Part shown: in pieces, positions 1 through 9,518 of the stretch
Numbering within the stretch: the stretch's first letter is position 1
Layout: the number at the start of each line of letters is the position of its first letter
From: Paramicrosporidium saccamoebae KSL3
Taxonomy: Eukaryota > Fungi > Cryptomycota
Direction of reading: 5' to 3'
Assembly (NCBI GenBank): GCA_002794465.1
Contig: MTSL01000109.1
Location: 1 to 9,518 of the forward strand
DNA: 9,518 nucleotides
Program-made: the position numbers and the translations under genes
Notes under the pieces: model-generated
What the model was told of the DNA's origin: nothing
What the model saw: only the letters and a program-made list of their open reading frames with translations
Database searches by the model: none

Positions 1-77
1 CGAGAGGTCCAAGATCCTCGAGATAACCGAGAGGTCCAAGATCCTCGAGATAGCCGAGAGGTCCAAGATCCTCGAGA
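1..77 (+). repeat. 27-bp coding tandem repeat, about 2.9 copies (CGAGAGGTCCAAGATCCTCGAGATARC)
   Basis: Units at 1-27 and 28-54 differ at one base; 55-77 matches the first 23 nt exactly. There are no spacers. Confidence 0.95.
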
Positions 78-165
78 GACTCAAATCGCTCAAAATACTC
101 AAAATACTCAAAATACTCAAAACACCCAAGAGGCACCTTTGTCTAAAAGACCGAGGCCAGATTAA
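1..165 (+). CDS. 3' end of an unknown protein, open at the left edge (REVQDPRDN REVQDPRDS REVQDPRETQIAQNTQNTQNTQNTQEAPLSKRPRPD*)
   Basis: Frame +1 is open from base 1 to TAA at 163-165. Both repeat types have 3n periods (27 and 9 nt) that keep this frame. It ends in an NLS-like KRPR. Absent from the ORF track because there is no start codon in the window. Confidence 0.6.
   Translation, partial: REVQDPRDNREVQDPRDSREVQDPRETQIAQNTQNTQNTQNTQEAPLSKRPRPD
79..129 (+). repeat. 9-bp coding tandem repeat (ACTCAAAAT-like; TQN), about 5.5 copies
   Basis: actcaaatc/gctcaaaat/actcaaaat/actcaaaat/actcaaaac/acccaa read directly from the sequence. Confidence 0.9.
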
Positions 166-278: not shown

Positions 279-1892
279 TTAGTCGGTCCAGTTTAGGCCA
301 TTGACGGCCAAAAGACCCGTCTTTTCAATCTGCTCCCTTGTTTTGACATGTTTTTCCATCGTTTCATATAGTCGTTGGCGCAGTCCTCGCTTATGATGAT
401 GAAGGATGCAATGCTGGTCGGCCACCTCTTGCCAAGATTTCAGATTCCGGTTCTGGCTGACAAGCGTTTTGATGCGCCGGGTGGACGGAAGGGCATTGTC
501 TTGGTGCGGATAGTCGTCAAAGTCGACTGTATTGCTGAAATCAAGACTTGGGATGGATAGTCCCTTGAACAACGAATCAATAAATTCTTCAGATACATCT
601 TCCAGCTTGGCCGGCATCCAATTTGCACTCTTTTCCTTTCTTACCAGCTTTGCAGACACGCCCTCGCGAAGATCGGCAACCCTTTCCAAAAAGTTCTTGG
701 CCAAAATGTACTCCATCCGTAGACAATCTCGGAATGACATTTCCCGACCGAGACGGAGCATCTTCATCGTGACAAGACTGGCAGTAGGCGACATGGTTAG
801 GATTGTTTTCAGAGTATTCTTGGCCCACTCATCTTCACGATTCTCTAGCTGGCTAATCACTTTCTGCAACGTCGGTGCCGAAAAGTACTGATTAATATCA
901 TCTAGCCTGGTCTGCAAGGAAAAGGGCTGCTCTTCACCAGCAAATTGCTCAATGTACTCTGCCAATGCCTCTGGCGCGACATCCGAATGGGAGAGACTCT
1001 CCACCAAGTCATCCACACGGACCGAGGGTACAAAGTGCGTTGCAATTCCGGCATGACTATAAATCATTAGACACTCTCTTCCGATCAGTACTAGTTGTCA
1101 TAGCCTTTAAGACGATGGCCGGTCAAGGCGAGAAATGTTCCCAGCTCGCCATCAAGTCTGGGCAAAAAGAAGGAGCCTCCCACATCTGGATAGAATCCAA
1201 TCGCCGTCTCAGGCATGGCAAACAGCGTATTCTCAGTGGCAATTCTAAAATGTCCGTGAACAGATATTCCCGCACCTCCACCCACTACCATCAACAGGCA
1301 AAAAGCGAGGTTTACTTGTGATTCCATCCAGAACCGAAATTATTGGCTTTTTGTATGTGCCAAGGAGATGATTTAACCGGTATTCTCGTCGGAAAAACTC
1401 TGCCCTCTGCGTGTCTGGCAATTTGTCATCCAGAACGCCTACAAATCAGCAACCACATGGATCGGGGAGATGATACCGACAACGTCGCCGCCAGCGCAAA
1501 AGGCCTTTGTCTTGGTGTTAGTGTTGTCCGCTTTCAGGATTATCATTCGGCAACTGGGACTGTTCTCCCACACCTAAACCCATTATTAGTGGGGATAAGA
1601 AGCTAACCTGCAGCGCACCGAGAATGGCCTCTACCATTCCAGCATTGAGTGCATGGAGAGCCGCTGGTCTGTTTAATTCGACAATGCGGACGGCTCCTTT
1701 CGAATGAAACTTGACGAATTCACACTATAACTGGTCAAAAATTAAATATTGATACATTCGGTAGAGAGCTGGTCATTTTAGTGGCAAAAGATGGATATGC
1801 CTACAGCTCCAAAAGCCCAACAAGCATACTGCGCTAGAAAAAGAGTATTGTCCAGTAAACTGACGCGCCAAATGTCTCAATCGGAGTAGCAT
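279..1892 (-). CDS. EHD3: Mitochondrial 3-hydroxyisobutyryl-CoA hydrolase (crotonase family, fungal Ehd3/mS47 type), 471 aa; exons 1892-1830, 1800-1756, 1724-1608, 1573-1477, 1438-1316, 1284-1092, 1056-279
   Basis: Removing six GT..TAG introns gives one 1416-nt frame with family motifs [64 protein letters not shown] (catalytic Glu/Asp retained), [19 protein letters not shown] and [13 protein letters not shown]. The N-terminus [21 protein letters not shown] (3 Arg, no acidic residues) resembles a mitochondrial presequence. Exons 1-2 are less certain than exons 3-7. Confidence 0.92.
1057..1091 (-). other. EHD3 intron 6, 35 nt, phase 2 (GTACTG...CTAAT...TTATAG)
   Basis: AAC TA|T CAT restores GYDN-Y-HAGIATH and removes the TAG that ends ORF 1091..1327. 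Confidence 0.93.
1285..1315 (-). other. EHD3 intron 5, 31 nt, phase 1 (GTAAAC...TTGAT.GGTAG)
   Basis: ACA A|TG GGT restores the conserved DGIT-M-GGG motif exactly. Confidence 0.93.
1439..1476 (-). other. EHD3 intron 4, 38 nt, phase 1 (GTATCA...CTGAT.TTGTAG)
   Basis: Restores [15 protein letters not shown]...EFFRREY. Confidence 0.9.
1574..1607 (-). other. EHD3 intron 3, 34 nt, phase 0 (GTTAGC...ACTAAT...TTTAG)
   Basis: CTAAT branch point; joins GALQ to [14 protein letters not shown]. Confidence 0.9.
1725..1755 (-). other. EHD3 intron 2, 31 nt, phase 0 (GTATCA...TTGAC...TTATAG)
   Basis: Removes an in-frame TGA and joins to [20 protein letters not shown]. The CAG 6 nt upstream of the acceptor would give TTA TAG (stop), so TAG is the workable acceptor. 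Confidence 0.75.
1801..1829 (-). other. EHD3 intron 1, 29 nt, phase 0 (GTATGC...CTGTAG)
   Basis: Joins the presequence exon to [15 protein letters not shown] in frame. There is no conserved motif to anchor it. Confidence 0.65.
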
Positions 1893-2119: not shown

Positions 2120-3670
2120 TCAGTCAACGTAGGAGGAATCAATCATTATTCTCACTTCACGCAAGGTAAAAATGGTCGAAATTTTAAACGAATCTAAAAG
2201 CTGTCTCATTGCTCCCCGGTTCACTATGAATTGGTTCCAGTCGAGGTTTTCAGCGGCAAGGCCAAACAATGCATCAAGATCGGCCTTTACTGAATAGTAG
2301 ATCATGAAGCATAATGTGGCGACAACCAAATTCAGACCTATTTCGTTGATCGAACTTAGAGACGTCTCGATGAGTGACTTGTATCGAGCAATATTGTCAA
2401 CTTGGCCAAAATACCAGTTTCTAGGCATTCTGGTGATCCTTGACATATCCTGGATAAACGGCACTCCCGAATCAGCATACTGTCTCGAATACACAACACA
2501 AGGTCCAATCGGTCCTTCTTTGCGCCACACATCGAGTCGATGTTGCAACGAGAGTTCTTTGAAGGGCAGAAATATTGCTGGAACCAAACTACAGACACGC
2601 TGTCGTTCCAGCGGGCACTGCTGAAGATAGACACTAATGATAACTCGTCCGGTGGCGGGCGTTAAAAGATCTGGGATCGCCCTGTCTATGATAGTCTTCA
2701 TGCTCTCAATCAACTGCACTTTGTCTTTTGTTGTTTGGTGCAATTTCAACACCAAGCTAGCCAATATCTCCCACAAAGATCTTTCAGCCGCAACCAGCCC
2801 ATCGTTGACAAGCTCAAAAACGCACTCCAACAGTCGCCTTCTGGTCATTGGTTCACTGGGAGTGGGATTGACCAAGGTCAGCCCCCAGGCAAGGTTTGGG
2901 AGAGCAATATCTGCAATATCTACAATATCATCTTGGGGGGTCAGTGCCAATAAAATAACGGTAGCCTTGAAGACACTTTTGGGATCGTCGTCAGGTTCTT
3001 TCAAAAACGAAAACAAACTACTACTTTGTGGAAAGTACTTTAGAAACATTCGATAAAACTCTGGAATCATGTCATCAACGAGCACACCAAAGAGCTTTTC
3101 GGCAAATTCCATCGACATGCCTATTAGTAATGTATCGAGCCACCTCAGGGACTCCATCTTGAAAAGATTTACAGAGATGGATTGCTGAAGCAAGGCAAAA
3201 ATTATCTCCTCTTGGCTACGAGTGTAATTAAATGCCAGCGGCTGTCGCCCATTGCAATAATGACCTCTAAGGGCCAGACAATGAAAACAGGAACATGGCA
3301 TCCTCTCGGCGGCAAAAGGATTTGCTTCATACCAAACTCCTGTGGCAACGGCCATTTCGGCAAGCGGTATATTGTTGAGTAGCTTTTGAAAATTGAACAT
3401 GGTTGGATGGAATTGTGTATACGCGAAAAGCTTGGCAAGCTGAGCGCTTCGCTCCTCATCCTCAACCACACTCGAGTAAGGGCTTTCAAAATCGAATCGC
3501 GGATAAGCTATAAGACCGCTAATGATTGCCGCGGATTCCTGATTAAGGGAGCAAGATGCAAAAAAGGCTTTCAGTGCATTCGAGCTGCAGCGTTCAGCCA
3601 GTAAATGTGCGGTAAAAGAGACGAGAACACAATCTGCCACAGCAAGGCACCACCATATCATTGCTGTCAT
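2120..3670 (-). CDS. Hypothetical protein, about 516 aa, no recognisable family; start codon uncertain
   Basis: Uninterrupted 1.58-kb frame with globular, Leu-rich composition, co-oriented with its neighbours. First ATG is at 3670 (the ORF track uses TTG at 3700). An in-frame TGA lies at 3706-3704. Hydrophobic N-terminus; additional small 5' exons cannot be excluded. Confidence 0.75.
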   Translation of the reverse strand: MTAMIWWCLAVADCVLVSFTAHLLAERCSSNALKAFFASCSLNQESAAIISGLIAYPRFDFESPYSSVVEDEERSAQLAKLFAYTQFHPTMFNFQKLLNNIPLAEMAVATGVWYEANPFAAERMPCSCFHCLALRGHYCNGRQPLAFNYTRSQEEIIFALLQQSISVNLFKMESLRWLDTLLIGMSMEFAEKLFGVLVDDMIPEFYRMFLKYFPQSSSLFSFLKEPDDDPKSVFKATVILLALTPQDDIVDIADIALPNLAWGLTLVNPTPSEPMTRRRLLECVFELVNDGLVAAERSLWEILASLVLKLHQTTKDKVQLIESMKTIIDRAIPDLLTPATGRVIISVYLQQCPLERQRVCSLVPAIFLPFKELSLQHRLDVWRKEGPIGPCVVYSRQYADSGVPFIQDMSRITRMPRNWYFGQVDNIARYKSLIETSLSSINEIGLNLVVATLCFMIYYSVKADLDALFGLAAENLDWNQFIVNRGAMRQLLDSFKISTIFTLREVRIMIDSSYVD

Positions 3671-3948
3671 AATTGTGGCAATAAAATGAATTTGGCACAA
3701 GAATCAGCGCTTTTGCCCTGGTGATTGCGTGATGAGACTATTACCACAATTTCAATATTAATAAGTGACAGGAAACTACCAGCCTATATTGGCGAGTCTA
3801 TCTTTCCACTCCTGTAACCTGAATCTCATTTGCATGTTTGGACAAATACCCAGCTCCCAGTGAAACATTCCACCATTTCACACATGCTCACTCGCCTTTA
3901 CAAAATCGCCTAATATGACATCTTTATGAGCAAAAAAATTATAATTAA

Positions 3949-4006: not shown

Positions 4007-7000
4007 TTATACGCAATCTTCGTCTTCAAGCTCTCCCAAAATCAAATTAATGCGCTCCCGTCGTAAGACTTCGTCGTCGTGGCGAGACCACAGCATTTGG
4101 CTTTTGGAGCGACGCAGCGTGTCAATCCGCTCGGCGGAACGCATTGTCGGTCCAGTGCGGGTCCGTGGACGAGTTTCAAAGATGGTGGAACCCGAGGCGG
4201 AGGCTTCTGAAGCAATCAGAGTGGAACGCGAGATGGAACGGGCAGGCGGCATGCGGATTGTGCTGGCAGTGTGACGACGATTCGGTCGGACCCGACGCTC
4301 ATATGGCATCGGACCAAACCATCCCTTTACATATTTGGGATTGCGGTACAGCTTCCATGCCACAAAGACCATAATAGCCACACCCAAAATACATAGTGCA
4401 ATGATCAGAATGGGCGGTCGGATGGGTCTCTTCACATCAGCCACCATGATGGAGAATTCAGTCAAATGGGAACAGGCACATTGGACATGGCTAGTGTTAT
4501 AGGCCAAAACTCGACATCCTTCTTCACTCCAAGAAGAAGAGGTCTGGTTGAGATAGCGATCGTACCAAACACACTTTGGTCGTCCACCCCGCTCCACGCG
4601 ACGTTGAAATTCACTGGACATTTGCATCAAAAAGGTCAAATGGCGGGTGCGGAACCACGGCGCCAGCACTTGAGATGCATTCCTAAAGGCCAATTCCAGA
4701 ATGTTAGTATCGATGCTAGAATTGCGCATCAGATTGGCGCTGGTAAAGGAACAGCGATATCCAAGACAGGACATGTCCTGAGAGACCATTCCACGGAGAT
4801 CCGGAAGTGTAAAGCCACAGAGTCGAGAAACGCGCGTTATATTCCGAGTGTCGATTAAACCAAACTCGAGGGCCTGTCGTCCACCCTCCCATGAGAATGG
4901 CTCACCATCCCATCCATCATAATCCTCATAGTCGCCAGGAGACGGGGTGTCCTCTTCAGCTGTAAAAACTAACAGAGGCTCGGCATCCTCATCAGCCTGC
5001 ACTAATCTCCTCTTTCTTGCCTTTTTCATAGATGCCATTTCTGTTTTGACCGATGATTGTGTAGCCGTCGATTGATTTGGTTGTCCCGCTGTCTGTCTAG
5101 CCGACTCCCCCGTTGACGGTCCGGCTGACTGCGCAGAGGTCTTATCCCCCCGATTTCCACCGGCACTTGCATCCGCATTGGCAAGATCACAGTACATTGT
5201 GCGCTGTACACAAGTCTCCAAAATATTCTTAATCTCGTGTACTACAAAACTGGCCGAACTACCACCACGGGGATTTTCATAAATAGGACCAAGCAACTTG
5301 AGCAATTTGATGACGTGATGGGGAGCAAAGCATCCATCGGGTCGCGAATTGGACATTCCCTGCGCCAAACGAAGAGTAATACGTAGCAACAGGGGACGCA
5401 AATCAATTGGCAATTTCCCTGGCAGAATGCGCTGCAAATAGTCCAAAAAGTAGGGACCCGTCTCGCTGGCTTCAATATGGGTGGACTGGGTCAACGAATC
5501 AACCACTTGAAGGATACGCGCCAATGTGACATTTCCATTCTTGGCCGTTGTCAAATCTGGCAATTTTTCACCCGGCTCTGATGCCAGCTTGTTGGCCATC
5601 TTGACTCCCTTTGCCTGTCCGGCCAAAACACTCGGCACCACATTGGCAGCGGTGAGGGCGAGGATTTCATAACCAGCGCGCTGATTGCGGGTGCGTTCAA
5701 ATCTTTGGAGTTGGGAAGCCAAAAAGACTTCTTTAGGGACAGTTCCATGCCGGGCGCTGATATTTCGTACCGGTACGGTGGTGATCAAGCCATCGCCATC
5801 TAAAATGTCCACCTCTAGCAGATAATGGCCCACATCAGTGGTAAAGGAGAGATGGGAACTGGGAGTAGGCGGTCCAAGGGGAATGGGATCACCACGAATA
5901 CGCGTCTTGAAGCGATAGCGCAGATTGGGACCAGACCAGCCATGGCAGGCGACAGTAAAACGATTCTCAAAAGCAGTTCCCACTGCGGATGATGTCAATT
6001 CACAATATCCCGCACTCGGCGGCTCTCTCACACGTACTGTGCGATATGCCCAACCGACAATGCCAGTGGTCCCATCCAACACGGCCACACGGAAACAATA
6101 CTCAGTTCCAGGCAATAGTCCTGCGGGTGAAATTTCTTTAAGACTCTTTGGTTCTGCCGTCCATTGTGGTTCACTACTCAGCCCAGTAGTAATTGCATAT
6201 GCTTGACGATTACAGTAGGGCAACGACTCCCAATGGAACGTGTGGTTTCTCATCTGCAACGGATCGCGCGGTTTAGCCACCGCTGCCATCATTTGCAATG
6301 TCCTCTCTTCCGTACTAACAACACTCTTTTGCATTGCAATCTCCACTCGTGGAACTGACGGATCCCGTGCCACTGCCACCACAATGGAATCACTAATCTT
6401 GTATCCAAATTGGCGATGAGTTGCTGTTGCGATAAATTCCATGTCGGTTGCCTTTTCAAAGTCTTTTCCATGAAGCACAAAATTGGTGCCTATAGACTTT
6501 GCAAGTTTTGTAGACTTTGTAGCTTCTGTAGCTTCTGTAGATTCTGTAGTCTTTACACCTTTTCCATCCTCTACACCTACATCTTTTCCACCCCCCAACT
6601 CCGACTCTGAATCCAGATCCAAATCCATAGCCAAACCCATATCAATGGTCCAATCTTCTCCATTCACTTGACAGGGTGACTCTCGATCCATGGATAGACA
6701 TTGCCATTCCACTGAAAATTCTTCCAAAGATGCTCCCACAGTTCTTACCCGTATTTGCGTGTCATCTTCATAGCCCACCAATCGACTACCGCCAATAATT
6801 TCCAATCGAACATTACTCGGTAGCACCGTCAAGGCGTGGGTGAACAGATAGGTGGAACTTTGGGCAGGATTCTTGTCCATCTTTACAGGCTCATCTTTAG
6901 TCTCCTCGTCGTATCCTTCCTCCATATAGTCCATCGCGTCCACCGAAACTACTACCCGCACCCCTAACACATAGTCACCAGGCTCTAATGAATTGGCTGC

Positions 7001-9518
7001 AAAGACGACAGCAGGACGGTTGGCACCACGGATGCGCACCCGAGTGGGACCAGAAAGGATACTCCACGCCATGGTTGCATTGTATGATCTATCACACACT
7101 GTGGCAGGTAATAGTGCAGTGAGTTGCACCGCCTCGTCCTGTCGCACTCGCTGCGGCCCTTCAATGGCCACGGCTGGCACGTGCATATTAGGAACGCGTG
7201 ATACTGTGGCGTAGCCCGTACCACCCACTCCAAAGAGATTCCACAGAGTCAGCTGCAGGGTATATGCCGTATATTCGGTCAACAGTCCCGCTGGAATGGA
7301 AAAGGCCAGTTTTCCCGTCTTGATTACATCAATGGCAGCGGCGTGCAAGAACTGGCGCAATGGCGCATCCAAAAAGTGATTATCCACTGCCGTCGAGTTA
7401 AAGTCAAAATGAGCATCGATAAAGGCGCGTCCCACACTTCCAACGGAACGGGACAGATCCACCGAAACAAACTCATCACAGCCCCCCACCACTTCCGGCG
7501 CCTCTACCACAATAGTCGGCGGATCAGCGTCAAAAGGCGGTGCCACTTCAATGGCGCCCGTTACAAACGCGCGGTTCAGCGAGTCGACATTTGATAATGT
7601 CCCATCTCTGAATACGATCAATCGTCCCGGCTGTAGTGCATTCTTTTCGCGTCGCGTGTAACGACTATTTACTTGTAGGCGCATTTCTAGCGGCGACACA
7701 AAGTACAACAGACAATCTTCTGGACGATTTCCCAACAATGCACCATTGGGCACATCGCGGGGCTGCATCACCAAGAAAGTATCACAGCGGAATCTTCGAC
7801 CAACTTCGGCATTCACCGGCCTATCAAAGCGTACAAAGACGTATTCTCCGCCTGCACTATACTCCGCCAACACTGCCAATGGAGCACGTGCCGGTGGGGC
7901 GTCTGTAAACACAATCTTTTGCTCCTCCACCACCTCTCCTTCAAAGAGCTCTGCCCCGTCCACTGCCGCTCCCACCAATCGATTGTTAATCCGCACCGGT
8001 GCTACTTTCACCATGGACGAGTTTTCTTGATTCCACGTGACCGTCGGGGTATAAGTGATGGTGTATGTTGTAGCTTTGGCAAAGCGTCGCAATGTCTGAT
8101 GCTGTGTGGCTGTGCTCCAACAAGTACTACGGGAACTTGAAATGGACGGTCGACTGCGTCTATGAGAACGACAGGGACAAGTATTTCCCGGTGTCATCAA
8201 CGACGTAATAAATGTCTGACTGCTGATGGTATAGGTGCTACTCCTTACCAACGTCGTGGTGACCACCGAGACTACAGTCGAGAAGGGAGTTGTTGTCAGC
8301 GTCGTATCCACTTGGGTGGTCAATGTCGTACTATCTGTTGTTGTAGTGCTGGTCGACGTGGTAGTAGAGGTAGTAGTAGTGGTGGTGGTAGTGGTAGTGG
8401 TGGTATTGGCCAAGGCATAGCGTACCATTAGTCCTTGATCTACATGGTTAGTCTCTCTCATTAAATGTACCCAGATTGAAAAAGGTGGTGCGGGCATAGC
8501 GGATTAGATTCTGCGTCATTCGGGGCAGATAGCTAAACACTTCCAGATATGCTCGCAGATAGCGCACTTGACCCGCCTTCAAATCCGTATACAAACTCAT
8601 TGTTCCCGGATGTTGTCGATACCAATGCAATGGCTGAGCACAGCCCTCCAAGTGATTGTCGCGTGTCACCACCTTGGCCAGGAATTCATAGTCCTCGAAT
8701 CCCACGCCATACTCTTCCGTAAAGCCTCCTGAGTCGATAAAGAATTGTCGATGAACCAACATGTTCGAGTCGCCAAACACATTTTTCAATACTCCATTAT
8801 TGAGTGCCGGTCCCAAGGGAACATAGCGGGCAGTTGCCTTATGCGGTTGAGGCATTGATCGACCACTGAACAATTCATGCCCCGTCGTCACCACATCCGC
8901 TCCAGTAAGTTCTGCCACTCGTGCCATCCATTCCACCTGCTCCGCTTTGGCCACGTCATCATCGTCCATGAACAGGATGTACTTGCCGCGGGCATGTTTT
9001 GCTCCCGTGTTTCGGGCCGCTCCCAAGTAGCGATTTGGCTCCCGTAGCACCTTCCAACCCCGCTCCTGCCACCACGTCCACGATAACTCACTGAGGAATT
9101 TGATGGCCTCTGCGTCTGTACTGCCATCATCCACCAAAACCACTTCAAAGTTACGGAATGTTTGGCGTTCCAGCGATTCAAGCGCCTGTTGCAGCAGCTT
9201 TGGTCGGTTGTAATGCGTCAGCACTACCGAAACCAATGGACTTCCCAATGGATCCGTTTGTATCGGCAGCACAAAGCCTTCCGTTGGACAAGGCGGTAAA
9301 GGACGCGCATGTACATCCGCCAACAGCTGACGCCATTGCGCCTCATATTGACGCACTGCCACTTGTGGGCGTCCCAACAAGACGCCATTGTTCAAGACAT
9401 CCAGCATGCGTTTAGAAAGGGCCACCGTGTCGTTGGAGGAAAAGAGTACATCGCGACGATCCTGAATGTGCACCAATTCCTGGGCACTTTTTAGATTACT
9501 GGCAATCACTGGCACTCC
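4007..9518 (-). CDS. Large multidomain membrane protein, 5'-incomplete, at least 1826 aa: GT4-like tail, GT2 glycosyltransferase, Thr-rich stalk, PKD/REJ-like ectodomain, GPS, single TM, cytoplasmic tail; exons >9518-8471 and 8439-4007
   Basis: ORFs 8448..9515 and 4007..8497 join in frame after removing the 31-nt intron (CTG G|AT CAA gives ...TTFFNL-D-QGLMVRYALANTTT). The downstream ORF alone has no signal-peptide-like start. Each ORF is clearly coding; the fusion rests on the predicted intron. Confidence 0.85.
4355..4411 (-). other. Single transmembrane helix ILIIALCILGVAIMVFVAW
   Basis: 19 uncharged, mostly hydrophobic residues followed by KLYRNPK (positive-inside rule). No other hydrophobic stretch in the remaining 115 aa. 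Confidence 0.88.
4442..4573 (-). other. GPS (GPCR proteolysis site) motif of a GAIN domain; predicted cleavage H-L / T between 4463 and 4462
   Basis: CVWYD....SWSEEGC......SHVQCACSHLTEFSIMV has all four Cys, both Trp and the HL/T triad of the canonical GPS. Confidence 0.92.
5770..7522 (-). other. PKD/REJ-like ectodomain (boundaries approximate)
   Basis: Repeated Ig-like beta segments with W-S/W-Q-C/W-E motifs (GCDEFVSVDLSRS, PAVAIEGP, WSILSG, LEPGDYVLGV, FSVEWQC, LLPGTEYCFRV) and the REJ hallmark EPPSAGYCEL...GTAFENRFTVACHGW...LRYRF...LEVDILDGDG. Confidence 0.75.
6507..6550 (-). repeat. 9-bp coding repeat, 5 copies (TES TEA TEA TKS TK)
   Basis: + strand tttgtagac tttgtagct tctgtagct tctgtagat tctgtagt. 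Confidence 0.85.
8201..8404 (-). repeat. Thr/Ser-rich mucin-like stalk encoded by an (ACC/ACT)n tract
   Basis: 12 consecutive Thr (8369-8404); 48 of 68 residues are Ser or Thr by manual count. Confidence 0.9.
8440..8470 (-). other. Intron, 31 nt, phase 1, GTACATTTAATGAGAGAGACTAACCATGTAG
   Basis: GTA donor, GACTAAC branch point 4 nt before the terminal TAG, same size class and TAG ending as the six EHD3 introns, and it restores the frame. Confidence 0.88.
8601..9239 (-). other. GT2 (GT-A fold) glycosyltransferase domain
   Basis: PLVSVVLTHYNR, FEVVLVDDGSTD, N..LGAARNTG..HARGKYILFMDDDD (DxD at 8955-8966), GGF...GFEDYEF (ED acceptor-base motif) and YRQH. Confidence 0.93.
9306..9518 (-). other. 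C-terminal end of a probable GT-B/GT4-type glycosyltransferase domain
   Basis: GVPVIASNLKSAQELV matches the G-x-P-V-I-A-S/T...E-L-V segment that follows the E-x7-E motif in Glycos_transf_1 (GT4) enzymes, and is followed by helical 'ALSKRMLDVL...W..LL'. The rest lies outside the window. Confidence 0.6.

What the first reader, a model, noticed from the sequence alone, without database searches (positions are those of the whole stretch)
4355..4573. Canonical GPS followed by only one TM helix
Seen: an intact GPS (C-x-W...W...GC...C-x-C-x-H-L/T-x-F) 16 residues before a single TM, then a hydrophilic tail and stop. Established: GAIN/GPS domains normally precede 7 TM (adhesion GPCRs) or 11 TM with PLAT (polycystin-1 family), and they self-cleave at HL/T(S), leaving non-covalently joined fragments. 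Inference: here the GPS serves as a release or force-sensitive tether for the ectodomain, with no GPCR or channel module in cis. It may be a minimal or ancestral REJ-GAIN-TM receptor in a fungal-like lineage, where I do not know such proteins as standard components.
Basis: partly seen in the sequence, partly recalled or inferred. Interest (0 to 1): 0.72.

Follow-up and report, generated by a model that had tools for sequence, protein, structure and literature searches.

The report
Self-cleaving GAIN module on glycosyltransferase protein
The GPS motif followed by one membrane helix is real, but it is the tail end of a much larger, conserved and unstudied protein of early-diverging fungi that joins two sugar-transferring enzyme domains to a polycystin-like stalk and a self-cleaving GAIN domain.

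Summary
On the minus strand, window 4355-4573 encodes a canonical GPS (Pfam PF01825, E=8.5e-13; HL|T intact). It is followed by one strong TM helix, a 111-aa tail and a stop. An AlphaFold model of the preceding ~430 aa matches only solved GAIN domains. Seven close orthologues stop at the same conserved C-terminal motif, and most of about 50 more distant REJ-region relatives have one TM after the GPS. Extra 7TM or 11TM exons are therefore very unlikely.

The "minimal REJ-GAIN-TM receptor" reading is wrong. The ATG at 8497 is not the start. A 31-nt intron (8440-8470) joins the ORF to an upstream exon that runs off the contig. That exon encodes the end of a GT1/GT4 domain and a complete GT2 domain. 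Orthologues add an N-terminal hydrophobic anchor and an EGF-like module.

The same TM-EGF-GT4-GT2-REJ-GAIN-TM architecture occurs in chytrids, an aphelid and a metchnikovellid microsporidian. All are annotated "hypothetical", and I found no paper on it. REJ+GPS+1TM itself has precedent in sea urchin SpREJ1/8/9.

Best reading: a secretory-pathway glycosyltransferase whose C-terminal GAIN self-cleaves, leaving two associated fragments. Cleavage and function are inferred, not shown.

The parts
8471..9518 (-). Upstream exon, 5'-truncated by the contig end. It encodes the C-terminal end of a GT1/GT4-type domain and a complete GT2 (GT-A) domain with DxD motifs (VDDGSTD, FMDDDD). The GT2 Pfam match is at about nt 9230-8847.
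   Evidence: Glycos_transf_2 E=1e-28; Glycos_transf_1 end E=0.003; nearest solved GT2s are GalT1 5hea, chondroitin synthase 2z86 and heparosan synthase 8vh7. The stretch aligns to the GT1 ORF end of L002.
8440..8470 (-). 31-nt spliceosomal intron, GTACAT...CTAAC...TAG. It joins the GT exon to the REJ/GAIN exon in frame.
   Evidence: Splicing gives ...TTFFNL|DQGLMVRYALANTTT, collinear with the uninterrupted ORFs P0004 and P0005 (...FFEIESGPMLKYALANTTT). L002 has an intron at the same position (about 58 nt, GTACTC..GCTAAC..CCTAG).
8198..8404 (-). Thr-rich, mucin-like linker (ORF aa 32-100).
   Evidence: translation. Tandem repeats at 8364-8404. The linker is also present in P0002, P0004 and P0005.
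5753..7909 (-). Conserved REJ-like ectodomain region (ORF aa 197-915).
   Evidence: Pfam REJ passes its cutoff in orthologues: P0001 at 37 bits and the third ORF of L001 at 33 bits. It gives no hit in the window protein itself. The family profile aligns across the REJ domains of P0028, P0032 and P0046, which score 73-85 bits.
4433..5737 (-). GAIN domain (ORF aa about 921-1355). Helical subdomain A is aa 922-1099, a disordered insert is aa 1116-1181, and beta-sandwich subdomain B is aa 1201-1352.
   Evidence: AlphaFold model: mean pLDDT 78.2, pTM 0.73. Foldseek top 9 PDB hits are all GAIN domains, E from 2e-9 to 6e-4, probability 1.00, about 400 aligned columns for the five best hits.
4448..4579 (-). 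GPS motif (ORF aa 1307-1350). The predicted scissile bond L1345|T1346 lies between nt 4463 and 4462.
   Evidence: PF01825, E=8.5e-13. (H, L, T invariant in 25 sequences). (HLT lies between the last two beta strands, pLDDT above 90).
4343..4417 (-). The single transmembrane helix after the GPS (ORF aa 1361-1385).
   Evidence: KD score 3.04, the only strong peak. (helix at model residues 447-471).
4007..4342 (-). 111-aa basic, Ser/Thr-rich cytoplasmic tail and stop codon (4009-4007). Near the end is the conserved motif LWSRHDDEVLRRERINLIL.
   Evidence: the motif and stop position are conserved in P0001-3, P0006, P0008 and P0014; 0 N-glycosylation sequons and 1 Cys in the tail, against 14 and 25 in the ectodomain.

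Best explanation
The finding is the C-terminal GAIN/GPS-TM-tail module of one large gene (window 9518..4007, minus strand, 5' end off the contig). The gene belongs to a conserved, uncharacterised family of early-diverging Holomycota. The family architecture is: short basic N-terminus, hydrophobic anchor or signal, EGF-like module, GT4-type domain, GT2 domain, Thr-rich linker, REJ-like region, GAIN, one TM, conserved cytosolic tail.

Shown:
- the GPS motif;
- a predicted GAIN fold that matches solved GAIN domains;
- the single TM and the genuine stop;
- the intron and the fusion to the glycosyltransferase exon;
- the family distribution.

Inferred:
(1) Everything between the two hydrophobic segments faces the secretory-pathway lumen or the cell exterior. 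No TM separates the GT domains from the EGF, mucin, REJ and GAIN modules, and sequons and cysteines are confined to that part.
(2) The GAIN domain self-cleaves at HL|T during maturation, as in polycystin-1 and adhesion GPCRs. This would give a large enzyme-bearing N-terminal fragment and a fragment of about 150 aa (beta-13 strand + TM + tail), held together non-covalently.
(3) With no 7TM or channel in cis, the module works as a cleavable, possibly force- or trafficking-sensitive tether. It couples the luminal/extracellular enzyme-stalk to a conserved cytosolic tail with several basophilic (R-x-x-S/T) candidate phosphorylation sites, rather than acting as a receptor in its own right. In this it resembles the single-TM sea-urchin REJ proteins.

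The glycan made by the GT pair is unknown. A surface or cyst-wall polysaccharide or glycoprotein is the most economical guess.
For: GPS and GAIN:
- Pfam E=8.5e-13.
- H, L, T and all Cys invariant in 25 sequences of 16-60% identity.
- GAIN fold: AlphaFold pLDDT 78, pTM 0.73, with HLT between the last two strands.
- The nine best Foldseek PDB hits are all GAIN domains: CELSR1, BAI3, BAI2, latrophilin-1/3, GPR110, CD97.

Single TM and real stop:
- KD scan.
- Same stop after a conserved motif in 7 close orthologues.
- Downstream neighbours differ between loci: an unrelated soluble ORF in the window, a BAR-SH3 gene in L002, an Ank gene in L003.
- Complete transcriptome ORFs P0019 and P0020 end after one TM.
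- Most of about 50 REJ-region relatives have one TM after the GPS.

Fusion to the glycosyltransferases:
- GT1-end and GT2 lie in one ORF in the window.
- A 31-nt GT..CTAAC..AG intron restores the frame.
- There is no intron in P0004 and P0005.
- GT1-GT2-REJ/GPS order is the same in L001 and L002.
- Pfam finds the same GT2...GPS architecture (REJ also called in two) in Amphiamblys OIR57414.1, Amoeboaphelidium KAI3659010.1, Chytriomyces KAJ3246689.1 and others.

Topology:
- N-terminal basic region plus hydrophobic segment plus EGF-like module in family members.
- 14 sequons and 25 Cys in the ectodomain against 0 and 1 in the tail.

Precedent: SpREJ1, 8 and 9 have REJ+GPS+1TM (PMC1934368).
Against: - Autoproteolysis is not shown. 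Some GAIN domains with a consensus site are not cleaved.
- The metchnikovellid-type members have lost the triad (SYG, HTG, NTG), so cleavage is dispensable in at least part of the family.
- The window protein itself gives no Pfam REJ hit at E<=1. REJ homology rests on orthologues and profile transitivity.
- The N-terminal part (anchor, EGF, most of GT4) is not in the window and is inferred from orthologues at 45-58% identity.
- In L002 the GT4 EX7E motif reads D-x7-Q by eye, so that domain may not be catalytic.
- TM counts come from hydropathy and AlphaFold, not from a dedicated topology predictor.
- No expression data exist for this contig.
Confidence: 0.6

Rival explanations
1. ORF 4007-8497 is a self-contained, minimal REJ-GAIN-1TM receptor that starts at the ATG at 8497. 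Its ectodomain is shed at the GPS.
For: The ORF is open from an ATG at 8497. The gene callers behind the public collection also split it there in several relatives: P0001 and P0003 and the L002 gene list. If the N-terminal hydrophobic segment of the full protein is a cleaved signal peptide, the shedding part of this model survives.
Against: - The first ~19 codons after that ATG read the end of the GT exon out of frame plus the intron.
- There is no signal peptide or hydrophobic segment at that N-terminus.
- P0004 and P0005 carry GT2 and the REJ-like region in one uninterrupted ORF.
- Full-length GT-REJ-GPS proteins are found in at least 8 distant representatives.
Confidence: 0.05
2. Gene-model artefact. 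Further 3' exons add 6 or 10 TM helices, making it an ordinary adhesion GPCR or polycystin-1-like protein.
For: The genome has introns. Lower-ranked hits of the profile search do have 7TM or multi-TM regions after their GPS.
Against: - The stop falls at the same place after a conserved terminal motif in 7 orthologues.
- Only ~300 nt separate the stop from the next ORF. That ORF is not multipass, and the gene following the orthologue in L002 is a different one, a BAR-SH3 gene.
- Transcriptome-derived complete ORFs of relatives end after one TM.
- The multi-TM hits match only the GPS portion of the profile.
Confidence: 0.03
3. The GAIN domain is an uncleaved structural stalk. It only spaces and orients the enzyme and REJ region relative to the membrane. 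The HL|T is retained for folding rather than for catalysis.
For: The metchnikovellid-type family members keep the GAIN and single TM but have lost the H-L-T triad. Uncleaved GAIN domains with near-consensus sites are known, for example the BAI2 and BAI3 crystal structures that are among the best structural matches.
Against: H, L and T are invariant in 25 of 25 sequences outside the metchnikovellid-type group, despite 16-23% overall identity in the distant members. That is hard to explain by folding alone. In the family's 50%-identity representatives the motif is C.C.HLT.F almost without exception.
Confidence: 0.25
4. Split adhesion-GPCR system. After cleavage, the exposed beta-13 peptide (TEFSIMV, close to the TxFAVLM tethered-agonist consensus) acts in trans on a separately encoded adhesion-type 7TM receptor. 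In Holomycota these receptors lack a GAIN domain.
For: The Stachel-like sequence is conserved. Holomycotans are reported to have adhesion-type 7TM domains with short unstructured N-termini, with GAIN and 7TM encoded in different genes outside Holozoa (PMC12716839). Drosophila Cirl 1TM isoforms cooperate with 7TM isoforms (PMC13197933).
Against: The hydrophobic pattern of beta-13 is needed for the GAIN fold itself, so its conservation needs no receptor. No partner 7TM gene was sought or found. The window and related loci show no linked 7TM gene.
Confidence: 0.05

Closest known systems
Sea urchin receptor-for-egg-jelly proteins with one TM (SpREJ1, SpREJ8, SpREJ9; PKD1 family)
   Same: A REJ region, then a GPS just upstream of the first and only TM, then a short cytoplasmic tail. 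There is no PLAT and no channel-like TM bundle (PMC1934368).
   Different: SpREJ1 carries an EGF module and C-type lectin domains at its N-terminus, not glycosyltransferases. It is an animal sperm protein. Direct orthology was not tested. The window protein's REJ similarity is weak: Pfam detects it only in orthologues.
Polycystin-1 (PKD1) and PKD1-like proteins
   Same: The REJ-GAIN/GPS juxtamembrane module with HL|T. Cleavage gives non-covalently associated N- and C-terminal fragments.
   Different: Polycystin-1 has 11 TM helices, a PLAT domain after TM1 and a channel-like C-terminal half. Here there is one TM and a 111-aa tail with no PLAT.
Adhesion GPCRs (latrophilin, BAI, CELSR and others)
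   Same: The GAIN fold (best structural matches), the GPS motif and a tethered-agonist-like beta-13 sequence, T-x-F-[AS]-[VI]-[LM]-[MV].
   Different: There is no 7TM domain. The N-terminal fragment carries enzymes rather than adhesion modules. GAIN-7TM linkage is reported to be restricted to Holozoa (PMC12716839).
Uncharacterised holomycotan proteins, e.g. OIR57414.1 (Amphiamblys sp. WSBS2006), KAI3659010.1 (Amoeboaphelidium occidentale), KAJ3246689.1 (Chytriomyces hyalinus), KAJ3194189.1 (Irineochytrium annulatum)
   Same: Same family and the same order of modules: anchor, EGF-like, GT1/GT4, GT2, REJ-like, GPS, 1 TM, short tail.
   Different: They are only distantly related to the window protein (hmmsearch 100-310 bits). 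Some add TIG domains. The Amphiamblys-type members lack the H-L-T triad. All are annotated only as hypothetical, 'GPS domain-containing' or 'Glycosyltransferase 2-like domain-containing' proteins.
Bifunctional two-domain glycosyltransferases (bacterial chondroitin and heparosan synthases; from memory also Golgi LARGE and EXT)
   Same: Two glycosyltransferase domains in one polypeptide. The GT2 domain's best solved relatives include chondroitin synthase and heparosan synthase.
   Different: The similarity is at generic GT-A level (E 1e-12 to 1e-17 over about 110 residues). No specificity can be inferred, and none of those enzymes carries REJ or GAIN modules.

Membership tests
GAIN/GPS domain proteins (Pfam PF01825; Arac et al. 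2012) | GPS motif with four Cys, two Trp and H-L-T/S at the cleavage site | tested here: met
   (E=8.5e-13, profile positions 1-44 of 45). (sequence). (invariant C, G, C, C, C, H, L, T, F).
GAIN/GPS domain proteins (Pfam PF01825; Arac et al. 2012) | A domain of about 320 aa with helical subdomain A and beta-sandwich subdomain B; the GPS forms the last five strands | tested here: met
   AlphaFold model: pLDDT 78, pTM 0.73. Foldseek top 9 hits are all GAIN domains, E from 2e-9 to 6e-4, probability 1.00.
GAIN/GPS domain proteins (Pfam PF01825; Arac et al. 2012) | Autoproteolysis between L and T, with the fragments staying associated | not testable with these tools
   This needs a western blot of a tagged protein and of H/T mutants. 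Only the residues are shown to be conserved.
Adhesion GPCRs (class B2) | Seven-TM domain directly after the GAIN domain | tested here: not met
   One hydrophobic segment and a 111-aa tail. No 7tm_2 Pfam hit. Orthologues are the same.
Polycystin-1 / PKD1 family | REJ domain upstream of the GPS | tested here: inconclusive
   No PF02010 hit in the window protein at E<=1. Orthologues P0001 (37 bits) and the L001 ORF (33 bits) pass the 25-bit cutoff. The family profile aligns over strong REJ domains of P0028, P0032 and P0046.
Polycystin-1 / PKD1 family | PLAT domain after TM1 and 11 TM helices with a channel-like end | tested here: not met
Single-TM REJ proteins (SpREJ1/8/9 type) | REJ + GPS + exactly one TM + short tail | tested here: met
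   The feature definition is from PMC1934368. This is an architectural match only; orthology was not tested.
Single-TM REJ proteins (SpREJ1/8/9 type) | N-terminal lectin (CRD) or EGF binding modules as the ligand-binding part | tested here: not met
   No lectin_C hit. The N-terminal part carries GT1/GT2 domains. An EGF-like module is present in orthologues only.
Holomycotan anchor-EGF-GT4-GT2-REJ-GAIN-1TM family (uncharacterised) | GT2 domain in the same polypeptide, N-terminal to the REJ-like region | tested here: met
   (intron restores the frame). (uninterrupted in P0004 and P0005).
Holomycotan anchor-EGF-GT4-GT2-REJ-GAIN-1TM family (uncharacterised) | GT1/GT4 domain, EGF-like module and N-terminal hydrophobic segment | tested here: inconclusive
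   Only the last ~45 residues of the GT1 domain lie in the window; the rest is beyond nt 9518. These modules are present in the closest loci L001 and L002 and in distant members.
Holomycotan anchor-EGF-GT4-GT2-REJ-GAIN-1TM family (uncharacterised) | Single TM after the GPS and a tail of about 75-330 aa | tested here: met

The most novel reading that the evidence does not exclude
The family is one half of a split adhesion-GPCR system that predates the holozoan GAIN-7TM fusion. After autoproteolysis and dissociation, the exposed TEFSIMV peptide on the 1-TM stub would activate, in trans, a separately encoded adhesion-type 7TM receptor. Holomycotan receptors of this type are reported to lack GAIN domains. 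A milder version of the idea: GAIN dissociation reports strain on the enzyme's own glycan product or the cell wall to the cytosol through the conserved tail.
Probability: 0.05. Interest if true: 0.9.

Novelty: new variant of a known kind. Interest (0 to 1): 0.55.

Why it matters
GAIN domains are studied almost only as the activation switch of animal adhesion GPCRs and polycystin-1. Here a canonical GAIN with an intact, invariant cleavage site sits on a one-TM protein that carries two glycosyltransferase domains. The lineage is one where adhesion-type 7TM receptors are reported to lack GAIN. The family is conserved from chytrids to aphelids and basal microsporidia.

This gives a natural test case for what GAIN autoproteolysis does when there is no receptor or channel in cis. 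It is also a data point for how the GAIN-7TM fusion arose.

In addition, it flags an unstudied, probably luminal or surface two-domain glycosyltransferase in zoosporic fungi that could bear on cyst or cell-wall glycan synthesis. The proteins are already in public databases as "hypothetical", so the novelty lies in recognising the architecture, not in a new fold.

Tried and rejected
- The first whole-protein homology search returned only 5 hits. The 8000-candidate word filter was probably swamped by the Thr-rich stretch. This was solved with a sub-alignment and the exhaustive profile search.
- An exact look-up of the window ORF in the contig index found nothing, so the missing 5' end could not be recovered.
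- Taxon identification failed:
  - the SRA and GCA accessions of related contigs are in no searchable paper;
  - the neighbouring HIBCH gene gave only 36-38% hits to insects, plus metagenomic relatives.
  The source is therefore called an uncultured eukaryote, probably opisthosporidian or chytrid-grade, only by the family's named members and by fungal-type intron signals.
- The Pfam REJ model does not hit the window protein itself.
- A pattern scan for in-frame introns inside 4007-8439 gave four GT..CTRAY..AG matches. Three have lengths that are not multiples of three; the fourth (6037-5815) has a 5' GT that is not a multiple of three from the in-frame stop. All lie inside an uninterrupted ORF that aligns with its orthologues, so all were rejected.
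- Literature searches for a described GT-REJ-GPS or fungal REJ/GPS protein found nothing relevant.
- The downstream ORF 2123-3703 was considered as a possible source of extra TM exons. It was rejected because it is not multipass and the downstream neighbour in L002 is a different gene.
- I did not use the second structure job on the REJ-like region, because I do not know of a solved REJ structure to compare it with.
Full report
**1. The observation**

The feature lies on the minus strand. The longest ORF of the window is 4007..8497(-), 1496 codons.

Pfam's GPS model (PF01825) matches aa 1307-1350 over essentially its whole length, with E=8.5e-13 and 49 bits against a 22.5-bit cutoff. A hydropathy scan finds one strong hydrophobic segment in the entire ORF (aa 1363-1381, KD 3.04). 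A 111-aa basic, Ser/Thr-rich tail and a stop at 4009-4007 follow. The description is therefore accurate and far beyond chance.

**2. Is it a full GAIN domain?**

I aligned ORF aa 915-1400 with 24 relatives (A4) and predicted the structure. The model has mean pLDDT 78.2 and pTM 0.73. It shows, in order:
- a helical bundle (aa 922-1099);
- a disordered, low-complexity insert (aa 1116-1181, pLDDT below 50);
- a beta-sandwich (aa 1201-1352), in which H1344-L1345-T1346 sits in the turn between the last two strands;
- a TM helix (aa 1361-1385).

Foldseek against the PDB returns only GAIN domains as its nine significant hits: CELSR1 8vy2 (E=2e-9), BAI3 4dlo, BAI2 8oek, latrophilin 4dlq and 8vti, GPR110 and CD97. 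All have probability 1.00, and the five best align over about 400 columns, covering both subdomains. A sequence profile of the same alignment hits adhesion-GPCR chains only through the GPS part (ADGRL3 E=1.6e-15).

**3. Is the single TM real?**

- Seven close orthologues from other assemblies (P0001-3, P0006, P0008, P0014; 45-90% identity) have one TM after the GPS. They terminate within a few residues of a conserved motif, [LI]W[STD]R.D[DE][DE]..LR.E[RK][IL]..IL.
- The genes downstream differ between loci. In the window it is an unrelated, non-multipass 527-aa ORF. In L002 it is a BAR-SH3 gene, and in L003 an ankyrin gene.
- P0019 and P0020 are complete ORFs from transcriptome assemblies and also end after one TM. 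This is RNA-level evidence in relatives.
- In an exhaustive profile search (962 hits at E<=1e-3, 34 at E<=1e-30), most of the ~50 representatives that match the REJ-like region and carry a C.C.HLT.F motif have exactly one hydrophobic segment after it, with a 75-330 aa tail. About ten score more than one. Typical 7-TM proteins appear only lower down, matching just the GPS part.

Extra 3' TM exons are therefore very unlikely.

**4.

The ORF immediately upstream on the same strand (8451..9518, open at the contig end) encodes the last ~45 residues of a GT1/GT4-type domain and a complete GT2 domain (E=1e-28; DxD motifs VDDGSTD and FMDDDD). It overlaps the ATG at 8497 in another frame.

Between them lies GTACATTTAATGAGAGAGACTAACCATGTAG (8470..8440). 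This is a 31-nt intron with fungal-type 5' GT, CTAAC branch point and 3' AG. Removing it gives ...TTFFNL|DQGLMVRYALANTTTT.... That sequence is collinear with P0004 and P0005, in which GT2, the Thr-rich linker and the REJ-like region form one uninterrupted ORF (...FFEIESGPMLKYALANTTT). L002 has a ~58-nt intron at exactly the same position.

The first ~19 codons after the ATG at 8497 are therefore spurious. The spliced product visible in the window is 1826 aa and still lacks its N-terminus.

In the closest loci that extend further (L001, L002), the gene starts with a short basic stretch, a 16-23-aa hydrophobic segment, an EGF-like module (weak Teneurin-EGF hits) and the GT4 domain.

**5. The family**

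Pfam on distant representatives gives the same module order, though not every module is detected in each protein:

| Representative | Length | Modules found |
|---|---|---|
| P0018 | 1952 aa | GT1, GT2, REJ, GPS |
| P0024 / P0159 | 2292 / 2463 aa | GT2 ... GPS |
| P0032 | 1708 aa | GT2, REJ (GPS-like CLCRHLSDF by pattern) |
| P0040, P0046, P0059 | 2367-2471 aa | EGF-like (P0046, P0059), GT1 (P0040), GT2, TIG (P0059), REJ (P0046), GPS |

Named members are:
- OIR57414.1, Amphiamblys sp. WSBS2006 (metchnikovellid microsporidian);
- KAI3659010.1, Amoeboaphelidium occidentale (aphelid);
- chytrid proteins from Chytriomyces hyalinus and C. confervae, Irineochytrium annulatum, Physocladia obscura, Phlyctochytrium planicorne, Nowakowskiella sp. 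and a Lobulomycetales MAG.

All are annotated "hypothetical", "GPS domain-containing" or "Glycosyltransferase 2-like domain-containing".

The strongest named match is Amphiamblys (310 bits), ahead of the aphelid (180 bits) and the chytrids (about 100-127 bits). The neighbouring HIBCH gene is split by several introns, and its only near relatives are metagenomic. I therefore infer an uncultured, mitochondriate early-diverging holomycotan, possibly rozellid or aphelid grade. This is inference, not a placement.

**6. REJ**

The window protein itself gets no PF02010 hit. Orthologues P0001 and the L001 ORF pass the curated cutoff (37 and 33 bits). The family profile, which includes the window sequence, aligns end-to-end over regions that carry strong REJ domains in P0028, P0032 and P0046 (73-85 bits). 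I call aa 197-915 "REJ-like" on that basis.

**7. How it most likely works**

Shown: the architecture above.

Inferred topology: no hydrophobic segment separates the GT domains from the EGF-like, Thr-rich, REJ-like and GAIN modules. All 14 N-x-S/T sequons and 25 of 26 cysteines lie before the TM. The N-terminal segments have positive n-regions. The whole enzyme-stalk portion should therefore face the secretory lumen or exterior, with the C-terminal tail in the cytosol.

Whether the N-terminal segment is a signal anchor or a cleaved signal peptide cannot be decided here. The first case gives a two-anchor hairpin. The second gives a type I protein.

Inferred chemistry: H-L-T and the disulfide cysteines are invariant in 25 of 25 sequences, down to 16% overall identity. 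This argues that autoproteolysis is under selection in this clade. The Amphiamblys-type members have lost the triad (SYG, HTG, NTG), just as some animal GAIN domains are non-cleaving.

Inferred role: with no 7TM or channel in cis, the GAIN-TM-tail most plausibly acts as a cleavable tether. It would be a maturation or trafficking checkpoint, or a force-sensitive link. It connects a luminal or surface glycosyltransferase/REJ stalk to a conserved tail that contains several R-x-x-S/T sites, three S-T-[IL] motifs and a terminal acidic patch.

The GT2 domain is a generic GT-A whose best solved relatives are bacterial polysaccharide enzymes: GalT1, chondroitin synthase and heparosan synthase. NCBIfam hits are all far below their cutoffs. 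No specificity can be assigned.

**8. Comparison with what is known**

- REJ+GPS+one TM is documented for sea-urchin SpREJ1, 8 and 9, and two TMs for SpREJ2 (PMC1934368). The bare architecture has precedent in animals.
- GAIN domains outside animals were noted in Dictyostelium and Tetrahymena (PMC3321182).
- Drosophila Cirl makes 1TM isoforms that cooperate with the 7TM form (PMC13197933).
- I found no paper describing a GT-REJ-GAIN fusion or fungal REJ/GPS proteins. These searches cover open-access full text only.

**9. Verdict**

It is right on GPS/GAIN, the single TM, the absence of a GPCR or channel module in cis, and the fungal-like lineage. It is wrong on "minimal", and "release" remains open.

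This is a new variant of a known kind: a GAIN/REJ single-pass module, here fused to a two-domain glycosyltransferase and conserved across zoosporic fungi and their parasitic relatives. Interest is moderate. The architecture is unusual and unstudied, and it bears on GAIN evolution. However, the proteins are already in databases, single-TM GPS proteins are known, and function and cleavage remain untested.

Noticed in passing
window 282-1724 (-): A 3-hydroxyisobutyryl-CoA hydrolase-like gene (Pfam ECH_2) is split over at least four exons in different frames. This confirms a spliceosomal-intron-bearing eukaryote with mitochondrial-type valine catabolism. Its nearest named homologues are only 36-38% identical (insects); an 88% relative exists in a JGI metagenome.
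   Followed up: partly
window 2123-3703 (-): A 527-aa ORF lies between the HIBCH gene and the GAIN gene. It has no Pfam family (only a 12.9-bit FAST_1 match), is mostly soluble and is not syntenic with the orthologous locus L002. Its function is unknown.
   Followed up: partly
window 1-129: Tandem repeats sit at the contig end: a 27-nt unit x2.9 at 98% identity (1-77) and a 9/18-nt unit (79-129). They may be why the assembly stops here.
   Followed up: no
window 6460-6610 (-), ORF aa ~630-680: A window-specific acidic, low-complexity insertion (…DLDLDSESELGGGKDVGVEDGKGVKTTESTEATEATKSTKLAKS…) is absent from all three full orthologues. It overlaps an 18-nt tandem repeat at 6493-6554.
   Followed up: partly
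window ~4955-5150 (-), ORF aa 1116-1181: A long disordered insert (pLDDT below 50) lies between GAIN subdomains A and B. It varies in length among orthologues, being shortest in P0001 and longest in P0002 and P0003.
   Followed up: partly
P0018 (Amphiamblys OIR57414.1), P0019, P0020: These members keep the GAIN and single TM, but the H-L-T triad is replaced by SYG, HTG or NTG, so they are probably non-cleaving. P0019 and P0020 are filed under gregarine transcriptomes (P0019 under Selenidium pygospionis in EukProt). They may instead derive from metchnikovellid hyperparasites of the gregarines.
   Followed up: partly
window 4010-4342 (-), tail: Three spaced S-T-[IL] motifs (ASTIR, SRSTLI, SGSTIF) are conserved in position across both tail subfamilies (…NTLL / SKSTLT / MASTLY in P0009-P0013). 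There is also a terminal acidic patch. Possible phospho- or sorting motifs.
   Followed up: no
L002 about 8130-8230 (GT1 ORF, …PAIGDISPFFLHQALRAGVPVIAS…): By eye, the GT4 EX7E catalytic motif reads D-x7-Q in this orthologue. If general, the GT4-like domain may be catalytically divergent. The corresponding residues lie just beyond the window's end.
   Followed up: no
L003 (NCBI GCA_020047435.1, JAHZTN010005835.1) and L004 (GCA_020049755.1): A second subfamily (P0009-P0013, P0021) has longer tails of 200-270 aa. It occurs in two highly fragmented NCBI assemblies whose organism I could not identify. These may be contaminant or symbiont contigs in a host genome.
   Followed up: no
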